Assembly: GCF_006345805.1 (NCBI RefSeq)
Contig: NW_021833024.1
Coordinates: forward strand, 248,001-312,000
Source of the DNA: Octopus sinensis
Lineage: Eukaryota
DNA length: 64,000 nucleotides
Direction: 5' to 3'
Below the pieces are notes generated by a model. That model did no database searches and had not been told where the DNA came from. It saw only the letters and a program-made list of their open reading frames with translations. Shown here one piece after another: positions 1 through 56,120 of the stretch. The position numbers were made by a program, and so were the translations under genes. The number at the start of each line of letters is the position of its first letter. Position 1 is the first letter of the stretch.

Positions 1-600
1 GATAGAAATAAAACGAGAAACAATTTCTTTCCCATTTTTATTGGTCCATCTGAATGGGGATTGTTCGTAGAAGACTGGTTTGGAGGATGTGAAGTGATAT
101 CTTGGTCTGACAAGGCTAGGAGTGGTCCCTGTCTTATCTGGCCAGTCAAGGGAGAGGAAAATGTCCACGTCGACTGAGGGGATGTCGACTGGGGACATTC
201 CTTGGTAGGCCACCACCAATCCGTTGGGTAGTTCGAGTAACTCAGAGTCACCTGGGTTTGTGATTTGTGTATTTATACTGATAAATTTAATTTTGGGGTA
301 ATTGTTGTGGTCAGTCGGTGTCTGGGGAGTGAAAATATATGTTGGGATGTTGACTGGATTATATAAATGGGAGTGATACTTTGGGAAGGATCAAATCCAC
401 TCCAATTGTATTCTGTGGCAAAAAAGTCGCCCACGCAGAAAAGTAGCTATGATAAATTAGGCAAATAAAACGTCAAAATTGCCTGCCTTTTTTTGAATTG
501 TTTCAATTCGGCTAAAAAGTCGTTCAAATAAACCGTCGACGTTTCCAGATATTAGACTGATTGGTAAGAGATTTTAAAACTACATTCGCAACGTCGACAT
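1..600 (-). CDS. CWF19L1: CWF19-like protein 1 (Drn1 homolog), 5' part; runs off window start
   Basis: Spliced translation (introns 557-583, 27 nt; 447-471, 25 nt): [43 protein letters not shown]...LPNGLVVAYQG...VDIFLSLDWP...VRPRYHF...FYEQSPF...SRFISI. This matches the motifs of the CWF19L1 N-terminal pseudo-phosphoesterase domain. Confidence 0.88.
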
Positions 601-897
601 GTTTAAACAATAAAATGTGCATCATTTACTATAGTTTAAATATTGTAAATAAAAGTCCATATTTATAGAAAAATTAGAATTGTATGTTTAAAAAAATTAA
701 AATTGATGTAAAAATATGCAGTTTATCAGAGTACTACCGATTGCTTAACCAGAGATGAGATTTTGACTTTATTTTATCAGAAGGTTAAAAACCTGGAAAA
801 TTTCCGCGACCTTGTAGTTAGTTGACCGTCCTTGTTAAACGGAAACCTTGAGATTAATTATTCCATTATTTAACAAGGTAAAATAATGTAAGTGTCT

Positions 898-1315
898 TTT
901 TTTTTTCTTTTTTTTTTTTTTCAATCAAAAAATCTATAAATTGACAAATAGTTATTAACTAACTAAATTCCGGCATCGTAAATGGAAACACAGTTTCCAC
1001 GTACTATGGCCAAGGAAATCCTTTCGAAAAGCCACTTGGACTCGCGTGGGTCTCCCCGTTTATGGAGATCATGCGGCCAAGCTTTTTTAGAAAGGAAAGA
1101 GACTTTTCGCCGATGACGCCGGAAGTCTCGACGGCGATGGGAGTGAACAGATACCGTTCAGAGAGCTCCTTGTACTTTCCAATCTTCATCTTCTCGGTTT
1201 TGGCGAGAGACTGAGCCAGGCTCGACAGCTGAAGAAGGAAGGTTGAGCTCCGAGAAAGTGTCTGAACACGTCGCATCCCATAACAGAGACTTGCCGAACT
1301 CAAACGGGAAAGTCG
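898..1315 (-). mobile_element. 5'-truncated CRE-like non-LTR retrotransposon (RLE C-terminus, poly-A tail)
   Basis: FPFEFGKSLLWDATCSDT and KYKELSERYLFTPIAVETSGVIG motifs. Poly-T on the + strand at 898-920. 12-bp TSD ATGTAAGTGTCT at 886-897 and 1316-1327. Confidence 0.85.
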
Positions 1316-1574
1316 ATGTAAGTGTCTGTCATAAAGGAATATATAACCCTTATTTTTGATTGTTTCTTTTTTTGTGGTTTCTTTGTAGTCGAAAGTTAAG
1401 TTTTTGAAAAAATTTTTCGACAGGCTTATTTAAATTAGGGCATGTTTATTCGCTTTTTCTCAAATAGATGTTCATGTCTAAACAATATTTTGATTATTTA
1501 TTAATTTGAATCAATAGATTATGTAATAATTATGTAATAAATGAAGTGTTGATATCAAATAAAGTATATCAAAT

Positions 1575-4923: not shown

Positions 4924-6181
4924 TCAGCATTTAATATCTTCCAGGAATTTATAGTAAAAGTCATATTTCATGCAGGCGTTGTATTTCTCGGGGGAAAGAG
5001 ACAGACTTGCGCAGTAAATCGATTGAATGCACATTTTATCGCACATTTCTGTCTTATCTTCTAAATAAGTGAAAAATCTTATGTAAGTGCATATATTTTC
5101 TTTTACAGCCTGCCTGAGAATTTCAGCACTGTTCCCCAAAACACCATAAACTGAATTTTGTGTGTGCACAACCCATCCACGTTCCTCAGTCATATAAAAT
5201 TGCTGATAGTTGACAATTTCCCCAGTATTCCGATTATACGAATAAAGACGCACACCAGGGTCCCCTGTTAGCCTCGACAGTGAGGGAGCTGCGTATATTG
5301 CCTTCGTTAAAACAAGTGGATCTGCAAAAATAGCATCGTGGTGAAGATGTCCACACAACACTCCCACAATAATGTTTTCGTATTGTCCGAGTAGATTTGT
5401 CAATCGGGTGTTGAATTTGGGGACGTTGTACATTCTTGTCACGTTGGGCTCATGTCCAGGAGGCACGTGGGACAAAATCAATACTTTTTTTCCTCTCTTT
5501 TTTAAGTTGAGCAGTTTCTGTTTAAGCCAATCGAATTGGTCCGCTGGGTCCGTGCGATAAACAGATTTGGTGTTAGGATATATCCAATGAACAGAATTAA
5601 GAACGACAATTTCCAATTCCGCAGAAATTGACTGTGAGTAATAACCACCTAACAGTCAAAACAGTTCAAAAAACCATTCAAAAATTCACGCTGTCCATGA
5701 GGAGAAATAAACTGAAACCATTCAGTTTTGGTAAGAAAATTCTGATAGAACTGTGGGTTATTGACTGGCCATTCGTTTGCAGGACAAAAGTCGTGGTTTC
5801 CGAGAACAGGCACGACGGGAGTCCCAGGAAAGTATTTCCTAATCTGATTCGAGGCCCAGTTGATTATTGGCAAAGGCCCAGAACTGTCTGGTTCACAAGC
5901 CGAATGGGAAATTGTATCACTTGATTAATTACCCTTAAATATTTTTACCCAGTCCATGCAATAAAATCGGGATTGCGCATTTGGCTGGACATGAATTTTA
6001 GTGCTGATTTAACCAGTTGGAAATGTGGACTATATTCGTCGATTTTTCCTTTAGAAGTTTGGATGTGCATGTCTGTAATCTGCCAAAATGTTCCATATTC
6101 GTTTTTCTCTAGATTAGAAATAAATTGTTTTAAGTTACTATTAAAGACTAGACAAAACAGCAGACTCAAAATTAAATGCAT
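4924..6181 (-). CDS. Acid sphingomyelinase-like phosphodiesterase (SMPDL3-like), secreted
   Basis: Signal peptide, then metallophosphoesterase motifs TDMH, TGD (across a 29-nt intron), GNHD, LSHVPPG and GHLH. GGYY is restored across a 26-nt intron. C-terminal Cys motif present. Confidence 0.87.
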
Positions 6182-12429: not shown

Positions 12430-13576
12430 TCACAAAAAGTCATTTCCCTTTTTTAGAAGTAATCCACCGATTCATGGACAACACATCGTAGCCAGACCTA
12501 AACAAAAAACACAAATATACTTGCAAACAAGGCAAACGGGAGTATAATGACAAAAAACTAAAAGAACAACTCAAATTCAACAACCTGCAAGGCACACAGA
12601 ACATACAAATCCATTAGTAATCTTCTTTCCATGACAAAAACACACAGATCGCATATCAGCCGGGAAAGTTGGACATGATTCTCCATTTTTGTCACAAAAA
12701 AAGCACTTCAAATCAAAAAACACTCAAAAACTGTCAAGAATCCAAAAAGCTTGCCAACTTCTTCAACCCGATGATAGACCCCGCCAGATATAGAAGACAA
12801 CTGAGAAAGTATGGAGGACTCTGACTTCCCCAGACTGACGGAATCGATCGTAAAATTCTAAAAACGAAAATAAAAATAGAAATATACAAGAGAAGTTGTT
12901 TTATAAGAGAGTGCTGAGAGTTTCATGAACTGTTTTGGATCATCGGGACTTCCTTGGATTATCTGATCATAAAATTGACCAATTTTAACCAAAATCCGGC
13001 AGTGGGTAGATGTTTGTCTGTTTCTGACTTTGTTTATGTCTAAAATGGCTGATTAATAAACATACAGCACAGAGCACAGGTCAGTCCGTTCAATAGGTTT
13101 ACTCCCGATGAACAGTCATAATCTTAAATAATAACTATAAATGAAATATGTTTAATATTACTTATAAATATTTTTATTTATTAAATTAAAATATTTAATA
13201 ATAAATATTTAAATTTAATTTACTGTTTTGTAGTATTCGCGCTATCTTTGATGTGAAGGCCTGTTCCAGGGCATTGAGGATTTCTAGCTGTCCAGAACAG
13301 TATAGAGAGGAGGTTGTGGCAATGTTCATTAACTCAAGCGAGGAGACAACGAACTCAGACTTTCCAGAACAGCCGTAGGCAATCGCAGCAATGGATGGAT
13401 TGTTGGCCATGGAATAGTAAAACTCAATAAAGCGAAGAATAGCAGCGAAATATTCCATGATTGATGTCTTTTTAATATTTATGTGATGCAAATACTTCAT
13501 CGAAATCTACGTCTTGGTTTGATGCTCTGCAGAGCCAGGATGGGCTTACTTCAAACAAGACAACAAAGTCCACCAT
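12430..13576 (-). CDS. GTF2H3: TFIIH subunit p34 (Tfb4)
   Basis: Spliced peptides MVDFVVLFEVSPSW, CRIL|IIQGSPDDPKQFMK, ILSQLSSISGGVYHRV and DMRSVCFCHGKKITNGFVCSVCLA|VFCHYTPVCLVC match the p34 vWA domain and C-terminal C4 zinc finger. Confidence 0.88.
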
Positions 13577-14086: not shown

Positions 14087-15187
14087 TCATATAAAGTAAT
14101 AATTGGCCAGATTATAGGATAAGGCACACGATTTAACGCAGTTTTGGAACAAACTTGCATTAAAAGTGGATATCAAGTTCGTCACGTGTGTATACTGCAC
14201 TTGCGACGGCAGAATTGAATTTTTTAGGACATCTCCCACAAACCTTTCGACTCTCTGACTCATCGACAACTGCATTCCCGCACAACAATTTTTCACTTCA
14301 GGAAAATGACCAGAAAAGTCGACTTTTTCAATCTTTTTGGCAAAATCTTTGCTTTTGTTCAAAATACAGATGAAAGCAGACTTTTTTAAAAAATTCAGTT
14401 GAGCCATTTCCTTAAATACGGAAAACGAGGATTCCAAATCCACGTCGAATCTGTCGAGAAATACAACAAACAAAATGCAGAAGGAATCCGAAAAAAATCC
14501 CACCGATCTTCTAGAAGATACCAATCTCGAGCCTTTTAAGATTGTGAGAGAATATGCGTGTCTCCGAATGATCAAAAGTGCGTTCTCCACTTCGTCCGAA
14601 GGCACAGGGACCCTCAAAATGTCATCGGCTGATGGCTGGTAGTTCTAAAAGCTGATCGGAAATAAAAACTTTGCTCAAAATTCGCTCCACCGAGTCCAGA
14701 AAGTACCGGAAATTAGGAGGCTAATAATTACAGGTTTTTTACTAACAAATTCAAAATAATGTTGGGCAATGACATCCTCGACAATAGGGTAGAGCATTAT
14801 TTGGACAATCGTGGTCTTTATTTTGTCCAAGTCGTCTTGTCGGTCTTCTCGGTAGCGTTTTAAAAGTTCTGAAAAATGTGGCATTGTGGTATCCGAATTG
14901 TTAGAAAGTATATCCACCAATTTATCCACCGTATCGAAGAGCATAGACGTGATTGCTTGACGAGCCCTTTCGGTCACTTGGGATGGAAAGGGAGTTAAGG
15001 TTTGATTTCTCAGTTGATTGAGTAAACAACTTTTTCCAGAAAGTGGAAGTCCAGTGATGAGAACTTTGGTTTGATTTTTGAGGAATCGTCTCTCTTGAAT
15101 CTGTTCATTGGTCGCCTTTAGCCATCGGAATCCTTTTTCGATCACTGATATGTTCTCTGCAGACTGCGATCTTGTTAGATTTTCCAT
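14087..15187 (-). CDS. Highly divergent heterotrimeric G-protein alpha subunit (probable pseudo-GTPase)
   Basis: P-loop GLPLSGKS, helical domain, YFLDSVERILSK|NYQPSADDILRVPVPS (two introns, 26 and 25 nt), and NKSKD in the G4 position; overall G-alpha layout. Confidence 0.8.
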
Positions 15188-26799: not shown

Positions 26800-29277
26800 A
26801 TGGGCAAAAAAGTAAACTATTTTATTCTTTAATTTTGAGAAAACAAATTCGATCAAAAAATCAACTGAACTTGAACGTTTGACTCAAATAAGTATTGCGT
26901 AACAAAATTAATTCTCAGAACTTCAAGAAGAAGCCGAACAAAGAAAATTAGAAGAATACAACCGTCAAATTGAAATTGAACGAGAAAACAAAATCAAAGC
27001 TGTAATCTTTTCAATCTATAAAACAGAAAACAACTCAGTCAATATTTGAAACAAACCAACTCGATGAAATGCGTTCAATAATATACAACCAAAGCCAAAT
27101 AGAAAAACTCAAAGAGTACGAAAACTACAAAGTTAACAAAATTCTCTAACTTAGTGGAATCGGTTTACTCGTTGTGACGGAAGTGTTGACCCATTGGACA
27201 TTAAGGAAGTAAATACATTTATCTCGTTATGGCTGGAACATGGGTCAGATGATATAAAAGAAATATTAGATGCATGTTCGAAAGTGATTAATGTACATAA
27301 CTCTATTCTAAGCTTTAGATGTTAAATGAAATCACATTTATTTCCAAATTTAAAGATTCGATTGATTATGAGACATATGAACAAGTAAAATATTTACTTT
27401 GGTTTTCAATGCAAGAAAAAATCGATAAAGGGACATTTAAAATACTTGAAAATGCAATTGGTCAGGACTTGGATGTAGATACTGGAAATTTAAACATTGT
27501 TTCGCGGAATAGGGACATTGTTTTTAACCTTTGGGGAAATTTAAGTAAAACTTTAAAGTCTTGTCGATGATAAACTCTTAAAGGGTCACAAGTCACCACT
27601 TTCCTCTTATAAATTTAACATTTGAAATATCTCGGAGCATACAATCATCAGATGTGGCGATTAGACTACTATGGGAGAGTTATGACATGCTAACCTGCAC
27701 TTCCCAAAGTTATAAAATCAGAAAACATCCGAAAAATCAAAATTCAATACGAATCGTGACAAATTGCACAAATTCTGACAGTTTAATTATTATTGACTTA
27801 TATCAGTCACAAAAAACGATTCCGAACTTGAATCGGACCAAGTAGGCAATTTAATTGTATTAAAATAACTAAAATGATTTTAATAAGACCAAAGAAAAAG
27901 AATTAGAAAGCAACATTAATGGCAACCAAGAAATAGTCGAAAGTGACTGTGAAGACCCAGAAGGTTGTTTATTTGAGATTATTTTAGATTTATGGGAATT
28001 TGGAGAATTTGACTTAGACTCTGAAATTATGGATATGCGTTGTTATCGAACTATAGGAGGACTGTACCATTTGGAATTGCTAAGTCTTCCCCCTCAACCA
28101 ATAATAATTAATCAAAATCTGAAAATGAAAATATGTATGGTCAATAATGATATTTTAAAGTGGCTGAAGATTGTTACTTACAAAAGATAATGTATGCTGT
28201 GGACGATATTCCTCAAACTGAAAAAAATAAAGTTATGAACGGAACCTCAATTCGAATAAATTTCAAGTTATATTATTTTAGCTTAAACGTAGACTACCAA
28301 ATAACGTTCTTATAACTGAACAGCCTGAAATAGCATGTTGGGACGAGAAAGAACTTAATTGGAGAACAGACTGGACGTCAAATGTAACATTCGAAGAGGG
28401 TTTTGTTTTGGTGTTATTTTTTTGATAATCGAATGCTGACATTTTATTTGAAAAAAATAAGTCCGTTCGCGATGATGCAAGACCGATATATTCACATGCC
28501 ATACCAGTCGTGGGAAATAAGACCAAAGTCCGTCAATCACGTGTTCATCAACGTAATCACTTCAATAGTGGAATTTGAAATAGAAATCAGAGTACAGCAC
28601 ATAAATGTTTATTTTAAGGATGACAAACTTTGTTTGTCGTCAATGCAAGGATATCGCGAATTGGATCACATGATTGGCAATTGGATGTCTTTAGAATGCT
28701 TTGTTCAGGTTTTTTAAAGTATTTAAATATAGGCATTATATGATTTTGGAATCAATATCTTTCCCAGCGAAGATTCAAACTACTTTTTACAAATGAATAA
28801 AAAAGTTGAATTTTTATCAAAATTTAAAGAGAAAAAAAATAACCGACAAACTATATTTTAACATTTCGGTTGCAGCACCGATGGTAGGATTTGCTTATTC
28901 ACATTTCAACGGACAAGTCGACAAGGAGACTGTCATATTACAAATGGCAAAGCCCAGCAGAGAAGGCACAATCAATGAAGTAGAATTGAGTCATTTATTC
29001 TTAGGTCGACTGGGTAGTGGTTAAGGCTTCGAATAAATACGTTGAATGTCTGAAAATATTAGAATTTGAACCAAATTTTAGCAGTGAACAAATGAACGAA
29101 GAAGCTGAGGTTTGGTTTGATTTTTGACTCTAACAGTTCCACGCTACACTTTATCACGTTGCGTGTGATTTATACGGAGAAGAAAAATTGGATGTCTCGT
29201 TTGCAGATAATTGGAAATTATACAACACATTGGAATCGTTTCTCCAAAAAGTGGATTTTTTGAATTATAGTGTTTAA
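26800..29277 (+). CDS. DNAI7: Axonemal dynein intermediate chain 7 / CASC1
   Basis: Multi-exon: WNRFTRCDGSVDPLDIKEVNTFISLW, FNLWGNL, RTIGGLYHLELLSLPPQP, NWRTD, MPYQSWEIRP, and C-terminal FHATLYH..FLNYSV*. Exact exon boundaries were only partly checked. Confidence 0.85.
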
Positions 29278-38848: not shown

Positions 38849-40712
38849 ATGAAAATAAGGGTAGTAATGGGGACGTTTTTTCTACTCCATTTGATCTTCG
38901 GAACAAATGAAGGACTCCCCAGAGTGGAGACTGATAACGGAACAGTAGAAGGATTGACGACTTTACATTTAAATAAAGAAATTGACAAATTTCTTGGAAT
39001 ACCATTTGCCAAGCCACCAATAAACGAATTAAGATTTCAACGACCAATTCCTCCTGATAATTGGACTGGGGTTTTTGAAGCAAAAAAACTTCCAAATTCT
39101 TGTGTTCAGGGCATTGACAAAAATTTTGGACGTTTTCAGGGAGTAGAAATGTGGAATGCAAACACTAATCGTAGTGAAGACTGTCTTTACCTCAACATTT
39201 GGAGACCGAAAGGAACGAAGGAATCCCTTCCAGTTATGGTCTGGATATACGGCGGAGGATTCTACAGTGGCACATCTACACTTGAAGTTTATGATGGAAC
39301 AACGTTGGCGGCAACAGAAAACATTGTTGTGGTAACATTCAACTACAGAATTGGAATGCTTGGATTTATCGCACTTGGCCACCCTCAAGCTGACGGAAAC
39401 GGAGGTTTATTCGATCAACTTTTGGCTATGAAATGGGTAAAGAACAACATTGCCAATTTTGGTGGCGATCCAACAAGAATAACAATTTACGGAGAGAGTG
39501 CAGGTGCAGCGTCCGTAAGTATTCATTTGGTGTCAAAACTGAGTCGTCCTTATTATTCTCGAGCCATTTTGGGAAGTGGGGCATCAACAAGCAGTTGGGC
39601 TGTGGTTCCATACGACGAAATAAAACGACGTTCATTGCTGGTGGCGATAAAATATTTAAATTGTCCTGCAAAGATCGACCAAATTGAACTCATTTTAAAT
39701 TGTCTGATCAGAATTAAAGATCCAATGCTTATTGCAAAATATGAATTTTATGTCGTCGATGGAATTTCTCAGTTTCCGTTTGTTCCTGTCATTGACGGAC
39801 ATTTCCTCACAAAACATCCTTCAAAATCATTCGCTTTGGGGGACTTCAAAGACTGTCCGCTCCTGATGGGAACTGTCAAGAACGAAGGAAACTACTTTAT
39901 AGTCTACGAATCACTAAAAACTTACAATATTTTAAATGGCAGTGACCTTGATGCGGCAAATTTCTCATGGACAATGTCAAATTTATTTTATTACTATCCA
40001 ATTTATCCATTTGTGTCATCAATTTTGATTACTGACTTGATCAAATTTTTTTACAGTCCGTGGAATAATCCCCAGCCATCCAACATCGACTACAGATCAG
40101 CCATTGATGCAGCAGTGGGAGATTGCTATTTTATTTGTGGTTTGAACATTATTTCGGAAGCATATTCCGACAGAGGACTACCTGTTTATTACTACAGATT
40201 TTGGCACCGATCTTCTGCAAGTACCTGGCCTGAATGGATGGGTGTGATCCATGGAGATGAACTTATTTATACCTTTGGAGTTCCTCTGACTCAGATTGAT
40301 AAATATCTTTTAGAAGAAGTCGAACTTTCAAAACGAATGCTTCGATATTGGGGAAACTTTCTAAGATCTGGGTTGATAATATTTTTTGGCTTTTTTAGAG
40401 ATCCAAATAAGCCAAATAACATTGTTTCAAATCAGCTGCTCTCTTACTGGCCTCCACAGACATCGTTGGATAAAAAATATATTTTTTTGAAGACTACAAC
40501 CGACTCAACGGTACAAATGATTGGTACAAACCCACGGTCATATCAATGCGCATTTTGGAATTCTTTTATGCCTAAATTCGCTTCAAGTATTTGATTTTTG
40601 GCTCAATAAGTTAGATATATATGAAAGGTCCAGTTGCAAGGGACATGAAAAAATGTCAAGTTTTTACTATTTTTCGGTTATTATTTTACAGCTTATAAAT
40701 TTCTGGTTATAA
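38849..40712 (+). CDS. ace: Acetylcholinesterase (invertebrate ace-1-like), probable GPI-type hydrophobic tail
   Basis: Signal peptide, EMWNAN (choline-binding Trp), GGGFYSG, GESAG (Ser), KNEGNYF (Glu), WMGVIHGDE (His), SQFPFVP. Introns at 40372-40398 and 40587-40614. Confidence 0.9.
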
Positions 40713-40815: not shown

Positions 40816-43800
40816 ATGCAGGACCATATGTCTTCGCAAGCTTTATTTGACTATTTAAACTGTGATCCTACTATTGGCCTATCCCGAACGGAAGTAATTT
40901 CCATTAGGCAAAGAACAGGGTTCAACGAATTGAAAAAACACAAACCAACTCCTCTCTACATACGCTATCTCCAACAGGTGAAAAAATCCCTTATTCCCAG
41001 TTCACCGAGCCTATGATACTTCTCCTCATAATCTCCGCAGCAATCAGTCTAATAATAGGCCACTACGACGACGCCACGAGCATAGCTGTTGCCATTTTCA
41101 TCGTTGTGAGCGTCTCCTTTATTCAAGTATATTTAAAAAATCTCACAATTAGGAATATCGATCTGAAAAATCGATCGATTCACTAAAAAAACTTGTCCCG
41201 ATGATGTGTCGCTGGTTTTTGACGACTTTTATATTTTAAAGTTTAAGGGAAGGAAACGTGGAACTAATTGAAGCCAAAGAACTTGTTCCCGGAGACGTTG
41301 TCCTTCTTGAAATAGGAGATCGAGTTTCTGCTGATATTCGACTTTTTGAAGTATAATTTTTAGCTATTTTAGGCCGTGGATTTGTTTGTAAATGAATCTG
41401 GTTTTACAGGAGAAAATGAGCCACAGCACAAGATTGTAGACGCCAGTGGGACTACAAATCGGTCCCTGGTTTATATGGGAACTTATATAGTTGGAGGACA
41501 CGGCAAGGTTGTTTGTTTTTTGTTTATTTTTTAGGGTTTTGTGGTAGCAATCGGAAGTAGCACACAGTTTGGGGAAGTGTTTGAACTTGTGCAATCAGAA
41601 GAGGTTGATTGTCCAAAAATGTTAATTTTAAAGCCACCAAAAAGTCCTTTGCAGATAAATATGTATATTTTGGGTAAACAACTCACAATTTTCTCTCTGA
41701 CTATAATCGGACTCATTATGGTGACGGCGTTTTTCCAACACAGAGAGATCCTTCATGTTTTTACTACTGCTGTGAGGTTATTGGCTCATTTAATACTTGT
41801 AGTTTAGCAGTGGCCGCAATTCCCGAGGGTTTGCCAATCGTGGTGACAGTTACGTTGGCCATTGCTATCATTCGAGTGGCCAAATTACGTTGTATTATAA
41901 AAAGGATGTCGACAGTGGACACATTGGGTAGTACTACTTACAATATATAGCCTGTGTCAATGTTTGTTGTTGTGATAAGACGGGGACACTCACAAAAAAC
42001 GAGATGACTGTCACTGACATGATCACCCCCGATGGGGAACATTTCAATGTGAGTGGTGCGGGCTATTTTGAGGACGGAGTTGTGTATTTGGCGGGAAATC
42101 CTGTTGTACAGGAGTCCGCACTGTCCCTTTCTTACCTCCTAGAAGTAGCCCGTATTTTATAAGTGTGTTTAGACGGCCTGTGTTTGTTGCAATGCTGACT
42201 TTCCTACACCTGGAAGCGTGAATGGTCAGCCGACGGAACTGGCGATATTAAAATGTGCCCAAAAGGTTTATTTGCTTGTGGGGATTTCTTTAGTTCAGAA
42301 TGGAGGATCCTCGGCTTAGACGTTTTTACAGAATCAGAGAATGGCCGTTTAGTTCTGAGTCAAAAACGATGGGAGTTTTGTGCACGATAAACGACGTATT
42401 GCCTACATTAAAATTCTAAAGGGATCACAAAACGGGAATGTCTATTTCTTGAAGGGGGCTTATGAAATAATCATTTCTCGGTGTTCTTTTTACTTTGATT
42501 CAATCCGTGGATATTCTCTTCCAATTTCCGCCCAGGATTTGAGTCGTTTTTCGGCACATGTAAAAGAATTGGCATCCAAAGGTCTCCGAAGTAAGACTAA
42601 AATAAATAAATCGAGTCATTTCTGTGGCACGTGGGTTTTCGGATGATGGAATGTCGTATGTGGGGTCGATTGGACTGATGGATCCACCCAGAGAGGATGT
42701 CGTTGAGTCCATACAAGTCCTACAAAGGGCTGGCATAGCTGTGAAAATGATAACCGGAGATTCACAAGACACAGCCCTCTCGATTGGTTATTTTATTAAG
42801 TGTATATTCAGCTGGGAATTTGGGAATCCGATTGCCGAATGACCGTTATTTGTCGGGGGATGAAATAGAAGAGATGGACTTGATGGAGACGACTGTGTTT
42901 TATAGGACGAGTCCCAAGCACAAGCTGATTATAGTGAAGGGACTGCAGTCGACGGGGAATGTGGTTATGATGAGTGGAGATGGAGTGAATGATGCAGCAG
43001 CACTGAGGTGTGCAGATGTGGGAATAGCCATGGGAATGACTGGAACTGACACCTGTCGTGAAGCAGCCGACTTGATTTTAGCCCGAGATGAGTTTAGAGT
43101 TATTGGGTTGACTAATTTGGCTGAAATCAACAGAAATGCTGTCGCAGAGGGGAGAAGTATAATTCATAATATCAGGAATTTTGTCAAGTTTCAGCTTAGT
43201 ACTAGTTTGGCTGCATTGAGTCTGACTGGGCTGGCTACACTCGCTAATCTGCCCAATCCACTCAATGCAATGCAAATATTGTGGATTAACATTATTATGG
43301 ACGGGCCTCAGGCTCAGAGGTGTGTTGTTTGTGTTATTTTAGTGTCGCAATGGAACCGTTTGACAGTGATGTGATGAATAGACCACCTCGCTGTGCAAAT
43401 GAACCCATTATTACTCGGAAATTGCTTTTTGACATAATTTTTGCAGCCTTTATTATAACGACGGGGGTTTTTGGTCTTTTTAAGGTGGAATTGAGTCGTG
43501 GGGGCTCCCAGTATTCCACAAAGGCATTCACGTGCTTTGTCTTTTATGATATGTTTAATGCACTTAATTGTAGATCTGCTGTATTTTGTGTATTATTTAG
43601 ATATTTTTAGGACAAATCAATTTTCTCTGTTGGTTTTTTCAAAAATAAGTCTTTTGTTGTGGCAGTTGTGTTTTCGTTAATTGGACAGCTGTTGGTTATA
43701 TATTTCCCTCCATTGAAAAAGGTTTTCCAGACTGAAGCACTTAAATTAAATGGTTTATATTATTTGATTAAAATTAATAGATTTAATCAAAATTTTATTA

Positions 43801-43902: not shown

Positions 43903-43959
43903 TTACTTTTTTTGCTCTGTTTATTTATTTAATAATAATAAATTTTTAAATAATTAGTG

Positions 43960-44645
<686 letters not shown>

Positions 44646-49168: not shown

Positions 49169-50991
49169 TTAGTTTCTAAAATCATACGGAAAGTAGTCAT
49201 TATAATCTAAAAATATATTGCCATAATTTAACCACTGTAGCTGTGGCGAGTCTTTCGAAGCCAAAGGAATATCCCCAACAATAAAAGCCCAAACACAAGA
49301 ATCAGCGCTAAAGGAATCCATAAAACGTAGACAAGGGAAATTCCTTCTTCCCACTTGATTCTCACTGGGATAATCAGACACCATAAACTTACAATTTGCT
49401 AAAGAAATTGTAACTGTGCGGTTTAATTTAATAAATCCGTCGGATAAGATACACGTGAAAGATTTTGTCTCATTTTCCATTTTTTTCAGTTTGTCGGACG
49501 GCAATGTAATTATGAAACTACTCTTGTTTCCTTCATCTAATATAAAATAGATTGAATTGTTCAGTTCAGTAGGTTTGCCTTCATATAACCAGCTTATTTT
49601 TATTTCTCGAATTGGGTCAACAGTTCCTTGGCACGTAATTCTTGGTCGGTTAAACAAAACTATTTCTTTGTTGTTGGGGACAGAGATTGTTGGATATTCT
49701 ATAATTTTGAGGTAAACTGTTTTCGCATTTCGTCCAAACTGATTTTGAGCAATACATTTAACACTCAGCGATTGAGTGGCCTTGGAAATTTCAAAAGTTG
49801 TTTCATTTTTGATATGCATATTATTATGTTTATTTAAATCTGAAACGATTAATTACTACAACTACCGTATTCCACCGAATCGACATACCAAGTTAAGGTA
49901 GGAATTGGGTAGCCTGCTTTTGGGACACATTTAAATGTCACATTATCTCCTCTTGTGGCATTCACTGAAATTAATGAACTGGAAATGATAGGCATTTCTG
50001 GCAATATTTAACAAAATATAACCATAAATAGAAACAGTGAACTCATATTTGTGTTTAAGAAGATACTTTTTAAAAAAGGGAACACACGAATATAATTTTT
50101 TTGGAATTATTTCACTCACATTAATTGATATAAAGTTATTTCCGATGAACGTGTCTCCTTCAAAAATGCCAATAGTATTATAATTTCTAAAAAAAAATTT
50201 TCGAAGGAAACCTCCCAAAAAACAAACAAGGGTAAATTTTTTCAGATTTTCCAAGCTCAATTTTTATGTCCTGTCCTCTTGGGTAAACATGGACCAAATC
50301 AAAAAAAGTTTCTTTTATAAGAAAATAATAATACCATTAATTGGATTTTCAAAAGTGTACGATAAGTAGTAATTTGGATCAGCTTGTTTAATGCACTTGT
50401 ACACATATTTTAAGTCTTCTTTGAGCAAATATTTGATGTACAAATCGTTATCTATAATCACAAGTCTGTGACTCATTGACGTCGAGATAATGTCTTCTGG
50501 ATCGTTTCTCATTATTTCATTGTTGTCTATTATCTTAGAATTCTGACGTTTGATCCAAATACAGTCATTGCCTCTAAGGACTGCATAAGGGGAATTTTGT
50601 TTTAAAACTATAATAAATTGTCTCAGGTATACCAATATTCATATTATTGAATGACGTTACATTCATTTCGAGAGATGTTTCACGACCGCATTCGTTTTCG
50701 ACAGAACAGGTAAAGACTCCTGGCTGGATGTAGTGCTTACTGAATACGAGGTTTCTTCCGTCCATATGGAAAGGTACAATTTGCTTAAAATCAATGGAGA
50801 CACCATCTATTGTCCACCTGACTATAAATAATAATATCAAACATGTAGTTTTTTTCAGGAAATGTATTTATAGGACATTCTATGTGATAATACGTGTCAT
50901 TAAGAAGAATTGTAGTGTCGGACGTGTCCATATATGGAGGGAGACAGACATTCGCTGTAAGAGTAAAAAATAGGAACAGATAAAGCAGCAT
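49169..50991 (-). CDS. Type-I membrane protein with about 5 Ig-like domains (paralog 1)
   Basis: Signal peptide; Ig motifs HIECP..W..FTCSVENECG, FKCVPKAGYPIPTLTW..KCIAQNQFG and TCQGTVDP..ISW..FTC. Splicing a 28-nt intron reveals the TM segment LVYVLWIPLALILVFGLLLLGIFLWL and a Tyr-rich tail. Confidence 0.78.
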
Positions 50992-51945: not shown

Positions 51946-52460
51946 TTATCGACGACGGGAAATTTTTAAAAGAATGAGGCACCGGAGTGTCTCTACTGAG
52001 CAGCATATTTCCCTGATAGACACTTTAGATATCTGACGTCCACTACAAAGCAACCGCGCCTTCTCCAGGACGGACTGTATTTTGGGGACGCAGGATTCAT
52101 AAGCGTTATCCAATTTTTCTTTGAGATCGAGACCGTAGGCCAACTTAATGGCGTAACGCCTCGTTTTCTCGAGTTTGTTGATTAGACAAACCCTCTCACT
52201 TGTGTCATACCAGCCCTCAAACCCGTATGTGAGAATCGGTTGTACACATGTCTTGTATATGTAGATGTATGTTTCTGGTCTCAGATAAAATCTGATCAGG
52301 CTTCGTAGGATTTTAACGGCTCTCTTCTTTTGGGTATCGATATGATTTCCCTAACTCCAAAGACACGAGCAGTTTCGTTCCTCCGCTTCGACAGCCTGCA
52401 CACTGTGCTCTTGTCACGGGCCAGCGTTAGACCTTTGCACGAGTCCATTCCATTATCCTT
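51946..52460 (-). mobile_element. 3' fragment of the same APE-LINE family as 18900-21500
   Basis: YKTCVQPILTYGFEGWY..KLEKTRRYAIKLAYGL versus LTYGFDGWY..KLEKTRRYAIKLANGL. Confidence 0.8.
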
Positions 52461-54231
52461 GCAAGGTATGGTTCGAGCCCCGCCTTCGAATTCGACTGTA
52501 AAACTTCTTTGTTGAATCAATCCTGTTCTACAACTCAAAGACCTGGGGTCTAACTGCCAAAGAACTAGAACAGCTCAATTTTCTACAGAAAACAATTAAT
52601 ACTACTACTAGGAATCCGCTGGCCAAAAAAGATGAGCAACGAAGAACTCTACATAATTATTCATACATCTGAGATCGCAAAAAAGTGATTTCCAGGAAGT
52701 GACTGCTTTTTGGACATATTCTAACAGCCTTGCAAATAACACCAGCCAATCAGGCCATGAAATCTTACTTTGTTTACCGAACAAAAGAATAACATTACCC
52801 ACCACGCTCGACTATGAACTCAAGTCGATTAGAAGAAAACTAAAATCGGTCGATTATCTGGACGATCTGAGAGATTTTCCACAAAATAAGAAAGAGTGGA
52901 AACAAATAACAGGGCATATCCTCAGTCGCATGGGAAAATTGGAATCTTAATTAACCTATTGATTTCGTGAGAATTGCACTAATAATATCCGAGTGCCTGA
53001 AATCAACATCCATCAATTTCCTACACTGTAAAACTAATTTTCTTGCAATAGAGAAACATCTAAATATAAGTTCCTATTTGACACAATTCCTTTTTGCTTT
53101 GCGAGATTCCTACCACCCTTGATCTGCTCTAAATGTTCAAATGACAATTGTCGTTTATTTAATAATACTCCTGCAAAAAAATACACCCGTATCCTTGCTA
53201 AAAGCAATGCCCTAAACCAATGGTCATATTCATTGAAATGAATTCAAGATTACATTTCAACGTTGACTATTCTAAAATTGACGCCGAACTCCGTCCTCAA
53301 TAAACTTCCACCGGATGTTTACCTCTTCGCAATGCTTCTTGACTATTATTTTCTGTGCTCTTTTCCGCTCTGGCCATCATCATTCATCAAATTACTACGC
53401 TCAAAAAATATAAGATTCAATCTCTCCTTTTTGTAACCTTTGCTGTATTAATTTAATTCGATACTCCAAATATAAAAAATTCAAAACAAAACAAATGAAA
53501 TAGACTATCAACGTCAGATACGTCGGAGTGTCAGATTGGTCACGTTTGAAATTTCCAATAAAAGTTACATTTCTCGAATATTTTTTCCTATGTGGCCTTT
53601 CGGCCGGGGAAAATTTGCAATGGCATAATTATTTCCCAAATCTGGAATTTAATAATAACCAGATCTCAATCTGAAAATCTTTTTTCTTAGTGATGACAGG
53701 AAGGTTTCTAAGTAGTCTTGATCAGCGGATAAGCGGATGATATTCTACTTAGACCCATTAAATAAAAGTTCGATATCGGAAAAACAATACATTATACAAA
53801 CTTTTTCCGACCGTGGGCAAACTTTTTCAGACGGACAGCAAAAAAAATGAGAGAAATTCTAGCAAACGATATTAAAGTACCCAAAAGGAATAGATACAGG
53901 GCGCTCGGTTTTACAGAGGAACAACAAGCACATTTCTAAAAAGGCAACTTTTCAGAGCCCTAAAAGTTTGACGCATGAAATGTTGAAAAACCTTTCACAG
54001 CGAAAACAGACGCTTCCTGGTTTCAGGAGGTTCATATTGTTACATAAAGCACAGGCACAGAAATAGAAAAGATGATCAAACAATGAAATAAAATAGAGGA
54101 CGCCAAAAAAGGGATAGCTAAGAATAGGAATACGAATAAGAGGAAAATCGGAAAAAGGGAATAAAGCGAATAAAAAAAGAATAACGTATAATATTCGGAA
54201 ATAAAATATATAAATATACAGTAACTTTTAA

Positions 54232-56120
54232 TTATTTTTTGTTTATTTTTTTATAAACCAAAGTGCGCGGAACATTTTGAAAATTTGAAAAGCATTCCAA
54301 ATCTCTAACCCAGAAGTCTTTTAGTTTTGTAGGGTCATTAGAGCTAAAATAACAATGACTAAAACAGTACCAGTTATTCGCCAATAAATTTGAACGCCTT
54401 CTCCAAATATAAACAGATGCACCAAATATAAAAATTCCAACAATCCCAAAAACGACCAAAAATACTGCTACTTTTGATACAGATTCAACTAAATTTATGG
54501 CACTAGAAATACTCACCAGAATTTATTAAAACTTTTATTGTTTGATTTACTTGTGATGTTTCATCAGATACGATACAGGTTAAAGATATTACTTCCTGTT
54601 TCATTTTTCGGAACTGCTTGGACGACAGGGTAAATAAAAACTCACTTTCGACTTCGGAATTTATTGTTAAATAGTTTTGATTTCTTGTATCACTCTTTAT
54701 CAATTCGTTGTTATATAACCAGTTTATCTGCAATTTATAAATTGGATCGACAGTTCCCCAGCATTTAATAGCATGTTGGTCGAATTGACTTATTTCGACT
54801 AGTGATGAGTGCGACATGAAAATTGTTGGTTTTTCTGTTACTTTGAGGTAAACAGTCCTTGCAGCTTTTCCGAAATCGTTTTTTATAAGACATCGAATAC
54901 TCATTGATTGAGTTATATTGTAGAAAGTTAATATGGTGCTATTATGATTCAAAGACACCTCAAAAGAATACAATTTTGTTTCTAAATCTAATAAAAACAC
55001 AAAATACGATATTCCTCAGAATCCAGGTACCACTTTATTCTAGGCTTTGGGTATCCTGATTTCGGAAAACATTCAAAGATTGCTGTTGCTCCAGTAGTAG
55101 CATTCAGTGAATGAAATGTGTCGGAAATAGAAGGCAATTCTGTGAATATTTTATACAATCAAACCGTAAAAACTAACTGTGAAATTAAGGTCGTAGTTAT
55201 ATAAAAAATTATTGCTTAACGAAGCGATCCCATAAAATTCATATGTATCTTCTCTCTTCTGTGGACTCAACGTTATCTTGTTGAAGCCCATAAAATGTTC
55301 ATCCTGATAATACAGTATTGTATAAACTCCCCTAAAAAATATATTTTAAAAAAAACCATCCAAAAAATATACAAGGAGTAATTTTATGGAAACTTCGAAA
55401 CTCAAGTTTTATATTTTGTCCTCTTGGAAAAAAGGGAACTGCTTTAAAGTTGGTTTCTTTTTTGTTTAAAATTATCAAAAAAAACTTGTAATAGCATATC
55501 TGAAATTGAATAACATTTTTCCGTGGTTAAAATCGCACATGTACTGAGAAAACGAGTCAGTTTCAAGAAAATATCTGATGTACAAGTCGTTGTCCAATTC
55601 AAATATTCGGTTATCACTTTGTGGAAGAAGTTTAAAGAATTCAGACGAAATGTAATCTTTTTTGAACCAGGTGCAGTTATCATTAATGCCCTTAGTCTTG
55701 AGAATTGCAAACGGGTGATGATGAGTATAAAAATCTAAACTCGTCAATCTAAACTCGTCAAATATACCGTTTTCTAGATTTAAATAATTCACTTTAAACG
55801 GAAGAGATGTTTCTTTTCCACATTTATTCTCGACAGTGCATTCAAACACTTGTGCGTCGACTGATTTTTTGTAGAGAACAAGATTTTTTCCCTCCGTATG
55901 ATACAATGAATTATTAAAGTTAATGGGAACCCCGTCTCTAGTCCACCTAAATGTGTCATATAGTATTTAAATACTTGTAATTATCAGAAGATGATGATTT
56001 GATTGGGCAGGTTATGCTGTTGTGTTTTTTTATAAAAATAAAATTCGTCTCCAACATTTCCATTACTGGAGGAAAACAAAAAGCTTTAGTCTGAGCAATT
56101 AATATGAAGAAATAATACAT
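54232..56120 (-). CDS. Type-I membrane protein with about 5 Ig-like domains (paralog 2)
   Basis: SITCPIK..KWTRDG..FECTVENKCGKETSL, FECFPKSGYPKPRIKW, KCWGTVDPIYKLQINW; TM VAVFLVVFGIVGIFIFGASVYIW. Shares intron positions with paralog 1. Confidence 0.78.

What the first reader, a model, noticed from the sequence alone, without database searches (positions are those of the whole stretch)
447..56000. Window-wide ultra-short (22-30 nt) spliceosomal introns
Seen in sequence: conserved proteins (CWF19L1, SMPDL3, GTF2H3, G-alpha, CASC1, NCBP1, AChE, SPCA, NDUFS7, both Ig genes) are restored only by removing GT-AG segments of 22-30 nt. Examples: 447-471, 557-583, 6588-6609, 40978-41000, 41127-41152, 41351-41372. 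I saw no obvious branch-point consensus. Established: typical animal introns need roughly 45-70 nt for spliceosome assembly, and introns this short are known mainly from ciliates, nucleomorphs and dicyemids. Inference: a remodelled metazoan spliceosome in a dicyemid-like animal, since ciliary CASC1 argues against myxozoans.
Basis: partly seen in the sequence, partly recalled or inferred. Interest (0 to 1): 0.8.

Follow-up and report, generated by a model that had tools for sequence, protein, structure and literature searches.

The report
Ultra-short introns of a dicyemid-like animal
The genes in this window really are interrupted by dozens of tiny 21-31-base GT-AG introns, but this is the already published hallmark of dicyemid parasites, which every indirect clue says this DNA comes from.

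Summary
I aligned homologous proteins to the DNA with a spliced aligner that allowed introns of 10-400 nt. Eleven genes are restored only by removing GT..AG segments. 59 introns are supported by orthologues and 10 by shared position and phase in two Ig paralogues. Their mean length is 25.7 nt (sd 2.0, range 21-31), and none is longer. As a boundary rule, GT-AG ranks first of all 256 dinucleotide pairs in both genes tested.

The introns are AT-rich (26% GC, against 42.5% in the SPCA coding sequence). Their signals are reduced to GT[A/T] and [T/C/A]AG. They show no significant branch-point motif, only a modest depletion of AG in the last 8 nt.

The source organism could not be identified directly, because nothing closer than about 50% identity exists in the protein database. 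Four lines of evidence point to a dicyemid: NCBP1 similarity ranks lophotrochozoans first, the window carries a ciliary CASC1/DNAI7 gene, its GC is 36.9%, and it is rich in LINE elements. These values match the published Dicyema figures (introns 26.2±1.9 nt, genome GC 36.7%, 49% repeats).

The phenomenon has been published since 2007, so it is real but already known. A "remodelled spliceosome" is neither tested nor required by the data.

Two side notes: the esterase gene hides an in-frame, stop-free 27-nt intron, and one CASC1 junction seems to need a non-AG acceptor.

The parts
447..471 (-). CWF19L1 intron, 25 nt, phase 0, GT..AG
   Evidence: gap-free junction vs human CWF19L1 8ro2_L1
557..583 (-). 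CWF19L1 intron, 27 nt, phase 2, GT..AG (6 codons after the ATG)
   Evidence: gap-free junction vs human CWF19L1 8ro2_L1
354..379 (-). CWF19L1 probable intron, 26 nt, GT..AG
   Evidence: joins the ORFs; small alignment gap at the junction vs 8ro2_L1/8ro1_L1; weaker
5649..5674 (-). SMPDL3 intron, 26 nt, phase 1, GT..AG
   Evidence: gap-free junction vs human SMPDL3A 5ebe
5920..5948 (-). SMPDL3 intron, 29 nt, phase 2, GT..AG
   Evidence: gap-free junction vs human SMPDL3A 5ebe
   Evidence: GT..AG and AT-rich, joins two ORFs; no homologue, so unverified
12570..12595 (-). Tfb4/GTF2H3 intron, 26 nt, phase 2, GT..AG
   Evidence: junction continuous vs human GTF2H3 8ebt_F
12706..12731 (-). Tfb4/GTF2H3 probable intron, 26 nt, phase 0
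   Evidence: 1-aa gap next to the junction vs 8ebt_F; weaker
12858..12887 (-). Tfb4/GTF2H3 intron, 30 nt, phase 0, GT..AG
   Evidence: junction continuous vs human GTF2H3 8ebt_F
14645..14669 (-). G-alpha-like intron, 25 nt, phase 0, GT..AG
   Evidence: gap-free junction vs G-alpha 4fid; Pfam G-alpha spans it
14721..14746 (-). G-alpha-like intron, 26 nt, phase 0, GT..AG
   Evidence: gap-free junction vs G-alpha 4fid; Pfam G-alpha spans it
26892..26918 (+). CASC1 probable first intron, 27 nt
   Evidence: ORF-joining model only; outside the aligned part of human DNAI7
27002..27026 (+). CASC1 intron, 25 nt, phase 0
   Evidence: spliced alignment to human DNAI7 8j07_k3; coiled-coil region, gaps near the junction, weaker
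27132..27154 (+). CASC1 intron, 23 nt, phase 0
   Evidence: small gap at the junction, weaker
27293..27318 (+). CASC1 intron, 26 nt, phase 0
   Evidence: junction continuous vs human DNAI7 8j07_k3
27558..27583 (+). CASC1 intron, 26 nt, phase 2
   Evidence: junction continuous vs human DNAI7
27781..27806 (+). CASC1 intron, 26 nt, phase 1
   Evidence: poorly conserved acidic region, weaker
27857..27887 (+). CASC1 intron, 31 nt, phase 0
   Evidence: poorly conserved acidic region, weaker
28135..28160 (+). CASC1 intron, 26 nt, phase 1
   Evidence: junction continuous vs human DNAI7
28267..28292 (+). CASC1 intron, 26 nt, phase 2
   Evidence: junction continuous vs human DNAI7
28400..28424 (+). CASC1 candidate non-canonical intron, 25 nt, GT..TG (or a base error)
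   Evidence: the GT-AG solution 28377-28398 deletes the conserved SNVTFEE and translates a T-run; every relaxed-acceptor run places a non-AG intron here, and GT..TG gains 29 score units
28592..28618 (+). CASC1 intron, 27 nt, phase 0, in frame, no stop
   Evidence: spliced alignment to human DNAI7; listed among the 3n introns
28709..28732 (+). CASC1 intron, 24 nt, phase 0
   Evidence: junction continuous vs human DNAI7
28805..28829 (+). CASC1 intron, 25 nt, phase 0
   Evidence: junction continuous vs human DNAI7
28980..29004 (+). CASC1 intron, 25 nt, phase 0
   Evidence: junction continuous vs human DNAI7
29110..29136 (+). CASC1 intron, 27 nt, phase 0
   Evidence: junction continuous vs human DNAI7
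30543..30568 (+). NCBP1 intron, 26 nt, phase 0
   Evidence: coordinates from Solemya P0121; same 18 lengths with Octopus P0124 and Owenia P0132
30670..30691 (+). NCBP1 intron, 22 nt, phase 2
   Evidence: three queries
30777..30800 (+). NCBP1 intron, 24 nt, phase 0
   Evidence: three queries
30981..31005 (+). NCBP1 intron, 25 nt, phase 0
   Evidence: three queries
31054..31076 (+). NCBP1 intron, 23 nt, phase 0
   Evidence: three queries
31221..31245 (+). NCBP1 intron, 25 nt, phase 0
   Evidence: three queries
31462..31486 (+). NCBP1 intron, 25 nt, phase 0
   Evidence: three queries
31585..31609 (+). NCBP1 intron, 25 nt, phase 2
   Evidence: three queries
31674..31699 (+). NCBP1 intron, 26 nt, phase 0
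   Evidence: three queries
31811..31835 (+). NCBP1 intron, 25 nt, phase 0
   Evidence: three queries
31901..31923 (+). NCBP1 intron, 23 nt, phase 2
   Evidence: three queries
32062..32082 (+). NCBP1 intron, 21 nt, phase 2 (shortest found)
   Evidence: three queries
32298..32324 (+). NCBP1 intron, 27 nt, phase 1, in frame, no stop
32425..32447 (+). NCBP1 intron, 23 nt, phase 2
   Evidence: three queries
32542..32569 (+). NCBP1 intron, 28 nt, phase 0
   Evidence: three queries
32792..32817 (+). NCBP1 intron, 26 nt, phase 0
   Evidence: three queries
32941..32966 (+). NCBP1 intron, 26 nt, phase 0
   Evidence: three queries
33081..33107 (+). NCBP1 intron, 27 nt, phase 0
   Evidence: three queries
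40372..40398 (+). AChE-like esterase intron, 27 nt, phase 2, in frame and stop-free (hidden inside a 581-codon ORF)
   Evidence: exact 9-aa insertion vs Anopheles AChE 5x61, bounded by GT..AG
40978..41000 (+). SPCA intron, 23 nt, phase 0
   Evidence: spliced alignment to Owenia SPCA P0003
41127..41152 (+). SPCA intron, 26 nt, phase 0
41215..41241 (+). SPCA intron, 27 nt, phase 2
41351..41372 (+). SPCA intron, 22 nt, phase 0
41508..41534 (+). SPCA intron, 27 nt, phase 0
41604..41633 (+). SPCA intron, 30 nt, phase 0, in frame, no stop
41777..41802 (+). SPCA intron, 26 nt, phase 2
41928..41950 (+). SPCA intron, 23 nt, phase 1
42145..42172 (+). SPCA intron, 28 nt, phase 0
42266..42293 (+). SPCA intron, 28 nt, phase 0
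42396..42421 (+). SPCA intron, 26 nt, phase 0
42591..42615 (+). SPCA intron, 25 nt, phase 1
42787..42811 (+). SPCA intron, 25 nt, phase 1
43107..43133 (+). SPCA intron, 27 nt, phase 2, in frame, no stop
43320..43342 (+). SPCA intron, 23 nt, phase 2
43581..43610 (+). SPCA intron, 30 nt, phase 0
43753..43780 (+). SPCA intron, 28 nt, phase 1
44046..44072 (+). NDUFS7 probable intron, 27 nt, in the presequence
   Evidence: ORF-joining model only; outside the region alignable to homologues
44185..44207 (+). NDUFS7 intron, 23 nt, phase 0
   Evidence: gap-free junction vs Drosophila NDUFS7 (82% identity overall)
44388..44411 (+). NDUFS7 intron, 24 nt, phase 0
   Evidence: gap-free junction vs Drosophila NDUFS7
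49840..49865 (-). Ig gene A intron, 26 nt, phase 1
   Evidence: position and phase shared with paralogue B
49998..50022 (-). Ig gene A intron, 25 nt, phase 1
50187..50211 (-). Ig gene A intron, 25 nt, phase 2
50312..50334 (-). Ig gene A intron, 23 nt, phase 1
50818..50842 (-). Ig gene A intron, 25 nt, phase 2
54489..54516 (-). Ig gene B probable intron, 28 nt, phase 1
   Evidence: the counterpart in gene A is unclear
54982..55007 (-). Ig gene B intron, 26 nt, phase 1
   Evidence: position and phase shared with paralogue A
55140..55164 (-). Ig gene B intron, 25 nt, phase 1
55332..55356 (-). Ig gene B intron, 25 nt, phase 2
55457..55485 (-). Ig gene B intron, 29 nt, phase 1
55947..55974 (-). Ig gene B intron, 28 nt, phase 2

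Best explanation
The window is a piece of nuclear genome from a dicyemid-like spiralian parasite. Its statistics match those published for Dicyema japonicum. Compact genes sit between LINE-type retroelements.

The genes keep many introns (17 in SPCA, 18 in NCBP1), but every intron has shrunk to 21-31 nt. These are ordinary U2-type GT-AG spliceosomal introns, most likely recognised across the intron (intron definition). What remains of the signals is GT followed by A or T, a weak exonic AG before the donor, an AT-rich and T-biased interior, and [T/C/A]AG at the end. The branch site is degenerate and probably lies 8 nt or more upstream of the AG.

The very narrow length distribution (sd 2 nt) is best read as introns sitting at the physical minimum at which the 5' splice site, branch site and 3' splice site can still be held in one spliceosome. 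Deletion bias and selection for compactness would push them down to that floor.

Shown here: the boundaries, the lengths, the composition, and that removing the segments restores conserved proteins. Inferred: that removal happens at the RNA level (shown by cDNA and RNA-seq in the dicyemid literature, not here), where the branch point lies, the ruler mechanism, and the identity of the organism.
For: - Alignment: spliced protein-to-genome alignment with introns of 10-150 nt allowed returns only 21-31-nt GT-AG introns. SPCA has 17, with 51% identity over 876 columns. NCBP1 has 18, with the same 18 lengths from three independent queries. CASC1 has 13-14. NDUFS7, SMPDL3, G-alpha, CWF19L1, Tfb4 and the esterase add more. 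The two Ig paralogues share 5 intron positions and phases.
- Controls: GT-AG ranks 1 of 256 boundary pairs in both genes tested, and the 20-32-nt window is enough to reach the full score.
- Catalogue: 59 + 10 introns, mean 25.7 nt, sd 2.0. Position +3 is A in 27, T in 27, G in 4 and C in 1 of the 59. Position -3 is T in 29, C in 15, A in 12 and G in 3. No GC-AG donors were found. Intron GC is 26% against 42.5% in the SPCA coding sequence.
- 3' zone: AG is depleted in the last 8 nt (6 observed, 13.1 expected, p about 0.01), and G falls from 15% to 8% towards the 3' end. This fits choice of the first AG downstream of a branch site.
- Organism: the NCBP1 hits are led by molluscs, a nemertean and an annelid. 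CASC1/DNAI7 and NDUFS7 are present. GC is 36.9%. There are at least 6 RT-bearing ORFs.
- Literature: Dicyema introns measure 26.2±1.9 nt with cDNA proof (PMC2222250). The median is 27 nt in Dicyema sp. (PMC6543705). D. japonicum has GC 36.7%, 49% repeats and many LINEs (PMC6736024). Its splice signals are reduced to GTa and AG (PMC13644364).
Against:
- No dicyemid reference sequence could be compared. The best database relatives reach only about 35-50% identity, even for LINE ORFs.
- No branch-point motif or positional A signal reaches significance. CTAA occurs in 10 introns against 4.7 expected, uncorrected; positional A gives p of 0.1-0.2.
- One CASC1 junction fits a non-AG acceptor better than any GT-AG intron.
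- The published logo for D. japonicum is described as GTa, whereas here A and T are equally frequent at +3.
- Introns whose length is a multiple of three are not clearly depleted (16 of 59), and five of them lack an in-frame stop. So there is no visible sign of selection through nonsense-mediated decay of the kind described in ciliates.
Confidence: 0.85

Rival explanations
1. The organism is not a dicyemid. It could be a myxobolid myxozoan, the other animal group known to have introns under 30 nt, or an unsampled lineage that evolved them independently.
For: Myxobolids have median intron lengths of 22-27 nt and similarly reduced splice signals (PMC13644364). No sequence in the databases identifies the source of the window.
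Against: The NCBP1 similarity ranking is led by molluscs, a nemertean and an annelid, and no cnidarian is among the 120 listed. A full-length axonemal CASC1/DNAI7 is present, E=4e-69 against the human protein. Myxozoans are not ciliated; this is general knowledge, not tested here. NDUFS7 is 82% identical to the fly protein, which argues against Henneguya salminicola; that species is reported to lack a mitochondrial genome and to have lost aerobic respiration (PMC13644364). GC and repeat content match D. japonicum (PMC6736024). A similarity ranking is not a phylogeny, and dicyemids are long-branch taxa.
Confidence: 0.08
2. The segments are not introns but short sequences cut out at the DNA level, like the internal eliminated sequences of ciliates. 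The window would then be germline DNA.
For: From memory, Paramecium eliminated sequences have a similar modal size. Also from memory, dicyemids have been reported to eliminate DNA and form circular DNA. Zverkov et al. report many circular contigs (PMC6543705).
Against: TA..TA boundaries, the ciliate excision signature, score far below GT..AG: 1542 against 2018 for SPCA and 1146 against 1488 for NCBP1. GT-AG is the best of all 256 boundary pairs. In Dicyema, comparisons of cDNA with genomic DNA showed these segments are spliceosomal introns, some at positions conserved in other animals (PMC2222250).
Confidence: 0.02
3. The interruptions are frameshifting insertions in pseudogenes, or assembly or sequencing artefacts.
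For: No RNA evidence is available here. One CASC1 junction (28400-28424) lacks a canonical acceptor and could be a base error.
Against: 69 segments in 11 genes all carry GT and AG, are AT-rich, and fall within 21-31 nt. The exons are under strong constraint; NDUFS7 matches at 136 of 165 positions and E=2e-97. Two diverged paralogues keep introns at the same positions and phases while the intron sequences differ. Random indels would not do any of this.
Confidence: 0.01
4. One reading: the introns are spliced by a substantially remodelled spliceosome that has lost or replaced branch-point and 3' splice-site recognition factors.
For: There is no significant branch-point consensus and only a minimal polypyrimidine tract. 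In human cells, short introns with truncated pyrimidine tracts use SPF45 instead of U2AF (PMC8363638), so a swap of factors is conceivable.
Against: Nothing in the window bears on the content of the spliceosome, and there are no snRNA hits. The boundaries and the AG-exclusion zone are canonical. U2 snRNA and U2AF1/2 are reported to be conserved in myxozoans, and a similar analysis is cited for Stentor (PMC13644364).
Confidence: 0.15

Closest known systems
Ultra-short spliceosomal introns of dicyemids (Dicyema japonicum, Dicyema sp.; Aruga 2007 PMC2222250, Ogino 2010, Zverkov 2019 PMC6543705, Lu 2019 PMC6736024)
   Same: GT-AG introns with a very narrow length distribution: 25.7±2.0 nt here, against 26.2±1.9 nt and a median of 27 in the literature. 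Many introns per gene. Proteins are divergent but bilaterian/spiralian. Genome GC is about 37% and LINE repeats are abundant. Splice signals are reduced.
   Different: Species identity is not demonstrated. Position +3 is A or T in equal numbers here, whereas the published logo is summarised as GTa. No intron longer than 31 nt was seen in the aligned genes, although the D. japonicum annotation has a mean of 38 nt, which implies a tail of longer introns.
Ultra-short introns of myxobolid myxozoans (Henneguya salminicola, Thelohanellus kitauei; PMC13644364)
   Same: Animal introns with a median of 22-27 nt, splice signals reduced to GTa and AG, and a parasite with a compact genome.
   Different: Those are cnidarians. 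The proteins here rank closest to lophotrochozoans. An axonemal dynein-associated gene (CASC1/DNAI7) and complex-I NDUFS7 are present.
Ciliate introns (Paramecium about 25 nt; Stentor 15-16 nt) and Bigelowiella nucleomorph introns (18-21 nt)
   Same: The same size class and narrow distribution, GT-AG boundaries and AT-rich interiors.
   Different: The genes here are metazoan (Ig-superfamily, CASC1, SPCA). All three standard stop codons are avoided in the spliced reading frames. No clear depletion of 3n introns: 16 of 59.
Orthonectid (Intoshia linei) short introns
   Same: A reduced spiralian parasite with short introns.
   Different: The median there is 57 nt and most introns exceed 30 nt (PMC6543705). 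Here none exceeds 31 nt.
Human SPF45/RBM17-dependent short introns (PMC8363638)
   Same: Short introns with truncated pyrimidine tracts. They offer a possible model for 3' splice-site recognition without a long pyrimidine tract.
   Different: The model intron in that study is 56 nt, about twice the length of those here. No factor dependence was tested here.

Membership tests
U2-type GT-AG spliceosomal introns | GT at the 5' end and AG at the 3' end | tested here: met
   69 of 69 catalogued introns. GT-AG ranks 1 of 256 boundary pairs for SPCA and NCBP1. No GC-AG or AT-AC improves the score by more than 7 units. One extra CASC1 site may be GT..TG.
U2-type GT-AG spliceosomal introns | Removing the segment restores a continuous, conserved reading frame | tested here: met
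   Junctions are continuous against orthologues for 59 introns in 9 genes. Without introns the alignment scores fall to 428 and 223.
U2-type GT-AG spliceosomal introns | Branch-point adenosine in a recognisable motif upstream of a pyrimidine tract | tested here: inconclusive
   No significant positional A (p 0.1-0.2). CTAA and TGAC-type words are only weakly enriched. The last 8 nt are 49% T and AG-depleted.
U2-type GT-AG spliceosomal introns | Removed from the RNA as a lariat, and absent from mature mRNA | not testable with these tools
   No transcripts of the source organism are in the collections searched. Published cDNA evidence exists for Dicyema (PMC2222250).
Dicyemid nuclear genome | Intron lengths tightly centred on about 26 nt | tested here: met
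   Mean 25.7, sd 2.0, median 26, against 26.2±1.9 (PMC2222250) and a median of 27 (PMC6543705).
Dicyemid nuclear genome | Spiralian (lophotrochozoan) affinity of the proteins | tested here: inconclusive
   The top named NCBP1 hits are molluscs, a nemertean and an annelid. SPCA gives no resolution. This is a similarity ranking only; no tree was built.
Dicyemid nuclear genome | GC about 36.7% and a repeat-rich, LINE-rich genome | tested here: met
   Window GC is 36.9%. At least 6 RT-bearing ORF regions and a DDE transposase are present. Reference values are from PMC6736024.
Dicyemid nuclear genome | Sequence identity to a dicyemid reference assembly or transcriptome | not testable with these tools
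   No dicyemid sequences surfaced in any search.
Myxobolid myxozoan genome | Cnidarian affinity and no ciliary apparatus genes | tested here: not met
   No cnidarian is among the 120 listed NCBP1 hits. A full-length CASC1/DNAI7 is present.
Ciliate-type internal eliminated sequences | TA dinucleotide at both boundaries | tested here: not met
   TA..TA scores 1542 and 1146, against 2018 and 1488 for GT..AG.

The most novel reading that the evidence does not exclude
The window comes from a spiralian lineage outside the sequenced Dicyema species, or from an independent third origin of sub-30-nt introns in animals. Its splicing machinery would tolerate stop-free in-frame introns, which could be retained to make protein isoforms, and occasional non-AG acceptors such as the GT..TG candidate in CASC1.
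Probability: 0.07. Interest if true: 0.6.

Novelty: already known. Interest (0 to 1): 0.2.

Why it matters
Introns of about 26 nt in an animal mark the lower size limit of the metazoan spliceosome. They are a natural experiment on how little sequence is needed to define an intron. That question is still open: no branch sites have been mapped and no factor requirements are known.

The existence of such introns in dicyemids has been documented since 2007, and genome-wide since 2019, so this window adds an independent, homology-based confirmation rather than a discovery.

There is also a practical point. Standard gene finders and read mappers, whose minimum intron size is usually 20-50 nt or more, will mis-annotate such genomes. 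My own simple gene finder, which scores only ORF length, got just 6 of the 17 SPCA introns right. In-frame, stop-free introns like the one in the esterase gene are invisible without homology or RNA data.

Tried and rejected
- ORF-joining statistics without homology (counting GT..AG pairs that link open frames, compared with the other 255 boundary pairs) were uninformative, because any two neighbouring ORFs offer many candidate pairs.
- Chaining by ORF length percolated across the whole window.
- Scoring by codon usage trained on two genes was too weak.
- A length-restricted ORF chainer got only 6 of the 17 SPCA introns right. I used it only to draft queries, never as evidence.
- Identifying the organism failed. 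An exact look-up of the esterase ORF found nothing. The LINE ORF search found nothing above about 50% identity. Rfam and tRNA scans of the window were empty.
- The branch-point searches (k-mer enrichment, degenerate yUnAy motifs, positional A anchored at either end) gave nothing that survives multiple testing.
- The partial G-alpha query produced a spurious 102-nt 'intron' at its truncated end. I discarded it.
- Introns of 10, 16, 20 and 58 nt proposed in poorly aligned parts of the Ig genes were not accepted.

Full report
**What was claimed.** It interpreted these as ultra-short spliceosomal introns of a dicyemid-like animal with a remodelled spliceosome.

**Checking the examples.** All six example segments begin with GT and end with AG on the strand of the gene they interrupt. 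The window is 36.9% GC. It contains no tRNA genes and no Rfam family above the gathering threshold.

**Approaches that failed.** Statistics based only on open reading frames could not separate signal from noise, because neighbouring ORFs can be joined by many arbitrary dinucleotide pairs. A codon-usage model was too weak. A gene finder restricted to 20-32-nt introns recovered only 6 of the 17 introns later established in SPCA. I therefore used homology as the arbiter.

**Method.** I wrote a local protein-to-genome aligner. It uses BLOSUM62, handles all three intron phases, charges a fixed intron penalty, and takes any chosen boundary dinucleotides and length range.

**SPCA (40828-43845, plus strand).**
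- With the Owenia fusiformis SPCA as query and introns of 10-150 nt allowed, the optimum uses 17 GT-AG introns, all 22-30 nt. It gives a continuous alignment of 876 columns at 51% identity.
- Leaving the boundaries free raises the score only from 2018 to 2070 and finds gaps of the same lengths at the same places.
- Among all 256 donor/acceptor dinucleotide pairs, GT-AG is best. The next best scores 1798, and the mean of the others is 1376 (sd 202).
- Forbidding introns gives 428.

**NCBP1 (30465-33215, plus strand).**
- Three independent queries (Solemya, Octopus, Owenia) return the same 18 intron lengths, 21-28 nt.
- GT-AG again ranks first of 256, at 1488. The runners-up each share one of the true sites (GT..TT 1282, TT..AG 1249). 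The mean of the others is 872 (sd 221).

**Length window, both genes.** Allowing only 20-32 nt gives exactly the score obtained with 10-400 nt. Allowing only 35 nt or more, or only 19 nt or less, loses roughly half the score or more.

**Other genes.**
- NDUFS7 aligns without a gap across introns 44185-44207 and 44388-44411 to Drosophila NDUFS7, at 136 of 165 identical positions and E=2e-97.
- SMPDL3 aligns across 5920-5948 and 5649-5674 to human SMPDL3A.
- The G-alpha-like gene aligns across 14721-14746 and 14645-14669.
- CASC1 aligns end to end with human DNAI7 at E=4e-69. Its 13 accepted GT-AG introns are 23-31 nt. Four of them lie in poorly conserved stretches and are weaker.
- Tfb4 aligns across 12858-12887 and 12570-12595.
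- The two tandem Ig-superfamily paralogues are about 35% identical. They share five intron positions with identical phases, while the intron sequences themselves differ.

**The catalogue.**
- It holds 59 orthologue-supported and 10 paralogue-supported introns in 11 genes. The mean is 25.7 nt, sd 2.0, median 26, range 21-31.
It sits in a proline-rich repeat gene with no homologue, so it stays unverified.

**Anatomy of the introns.**
- Donor: among the 59 orthologue-supported introns, position +3 is A in 27, T in 27, G in 4 and C in 1.
- Exon context: the exon positions before the donor weakly favour A at -2 and G at -1 (34 and 26 of the 56 introns in the first catalogue).
- Acceptor: position -3 is T in 29, C in 15, A in 12 and G in 3.
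- Composition: introns are 26% GC, against 42.5% for the SPCA coding sequence.
- Non-canonical types: there are no GC-AG donors and no convincing AT-AC type.
- Phase: 0 in 36, 1 in 8 and 2 in 15 of the 59.
- Length class: 16 of the 59 have a length that is a multiple of three, which is not clearly fewer than one third. Five of those lack an in-frame stop.
- Branch point: I found no significant motif. CTAA occurs in 10 introns against 4.7 expected, and TGAC-type words are somewhat enriched, but neither survives correction for the number of words tested. Positional enrichment of A, anchored at either end, gives p of 0.1-0.2.
- Positive sign: AG is depleted in the last 8 nt (6 introns against 13.1 expected, p about 0.01), and G drops towards the 3' end. 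This is what a branch site 8 nt or more upstream, followed by use of the first AG, would produce.

**What the organism is.**
- Direct identification failed. The best relatives of SPCA (about 46% identity), NCBP1 (about 35%) and even the intronless 993-codon LINE ORF (up to 50%) are distant. An exact look-up of the esterase ORF found nothing.
- The indirect evidence agrees with a dicyemid. The NCBP1 ranking starts with bivalves, cephalopods, gastropods, a chiton, a nemertean and an annelid, and contains no cnidarian. The axonemal gene CASC1/DNAI7 and a highly conserved complex-I subunit are present.
- The window has at least six reverse-transcriptase-bearing ORF regions and one DDE transposase.
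- The published description of Dicyema japonicum gives GC 36.7%, 49% repeats and many LINEs (PMC6736024). Dicyema introns measure 26.2±1.9 nt (n=16, cDNA against genomic DNA; PMC2222250), with a median of 27 nt in a second species (PMC6543705).
- The orthonectid Intoshia has a median of 57 nt (PMC6543705) and is excluded.
- Myxobolid myxozoans are the only other animals known with such introns (PMC13644364). They do not fit the protein affinities or the ciliary gene.

**How it most likely works.** These are canonical U2-type introns at the minimum workable size, recognised across the intron. The signals are stripped to GTW, an AT-rich spacer with a degenerate branch site, and YAG or AAG. The 2-nt standard deviation suggests a steric floor set by the spliceosome plus a deletion bias, rather than a positive length code. 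Nothing in the window tests whether the spliceosome is remodelled. In myxozoans, U2 snRNA and U2AF were reported to be intact (PMC13644364). Human short introns can use SPF45 instead of U2AF (PMC8363638), so a change of factor is possible but is not indicated here.

**Rivals.** DNA-level excision is disfavoured, because TA..TA boundaries score far lower. Pseudogenes or artefacts are excluded by the uniformity of 69 segments and by strong exon conservation.

**Verdict.** The taxonomic inference is reasonable. The mechanistic inference (remodelling) is unsupported. The phenomenon is already in the literature (2007, 2010, 2019, 2026), so novelty and interest are low.

**Two details for anyone with the reads.**
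- The esterase ORF hides a 27-nt in-frame, stop-free intron (40372-40398). It is revealed only as an exact 9-residue insertion relative to acetylcholinesterases.
- CASC1 at 28377-28430 is better explained by a 25-nt GT..TG segment (28400-28424), or by a base error, than by any GT-AG intron.

Noticed in passing
window 40372-40398 (+): The 581-codon AChE-like ORF looks intronless. It contains a 27-nt GT..AG segment that is in frame and has no stop. The segment corresponds exactly to a 9-residue insertion (LIIFFGFFR) relative to acetylcholinesterases. It is a hidden 3n intron that ORF-based annotation would translate.
   Followed up: yes
window 28377-28430 (+), CASC1: The only GT-AG solution (28377-28398) deletes the conserved SNVTFEE and translates a T-run. 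All relaxed-acceptor alignments place a non-AG intron here, and the best is GT..TG at 28400-28424 (25 nt). This is either a non-canonical acceptor or a base error in the assembly.
   Followed up: partly
window 1607-4585 (-), 8514-11094 (+), 19689-21122 (+), 35931-36662 (-), 61849-63548 (+); 60745-61200 (-): There are several non-LTR retroelement copies, some with reverse transcriptase plus an N-terminal PHD finger. One has an intact 993-codon ORF and others are broken by frameshifts. There is also an IS1595-like DDE transposase fragment. None is interrupted by short introns. Together they fill a large share of the window.
   Followed up: partly
window 1607-4585 (-): Among named database hits, the LINE ORF's closest relatives include Octopus sinensis proteins (47-50% identity over about 60% of the query) and barnacle SLACS-like elements. 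Cephalopods are the hosts of dicyemids, but the similarity is far too low to argue for transfer.
   Followed up: no
window 14090-15190 (-): The G-alpha-like protein is very divergent (PDB E about 1e-11). Its P-loop reads GLPLSGKS. The switch II motif DVGGQ is replaced by ILKGS in the alignment to 4fid, so it may not hydrolyse or even bind GTP.
   Followed up: no
window 6359-7030 (-): A proline-rich gene with tandem repeats of roughly DQPSSTYS(K/R)LPCPPPLT has no Pfam match and no homologue.
   Followed up: no
window 48900-51200 (-) and 54000-56300 (-): Two tandem Ig-superfamily paralogues, about 35% identical, share five intron positions and phases. The introns flanking the Ig domain are phase 1, as is usual for Ig exons. 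RT-like ORF fragments lie between the two genes.
   Followed up: partly
window 40594-40828 and 43845-43960 (+): Where no transposon is inserted, the genes are packed very tightly. The esterase stop codon is about 230 nt from the start of the SPCA alignment, and the end of SPCA is about 115 nt from the putative NDUFS7 start codon.
   Followed up: no
whole window: No protein encoded here, not even the multi-copy LINE ORF, has a relative above about 50% identity in a 5.8-billion-protein collection. The source genome and transcriptome are therefore absent from that resource.
   Followed up: yes
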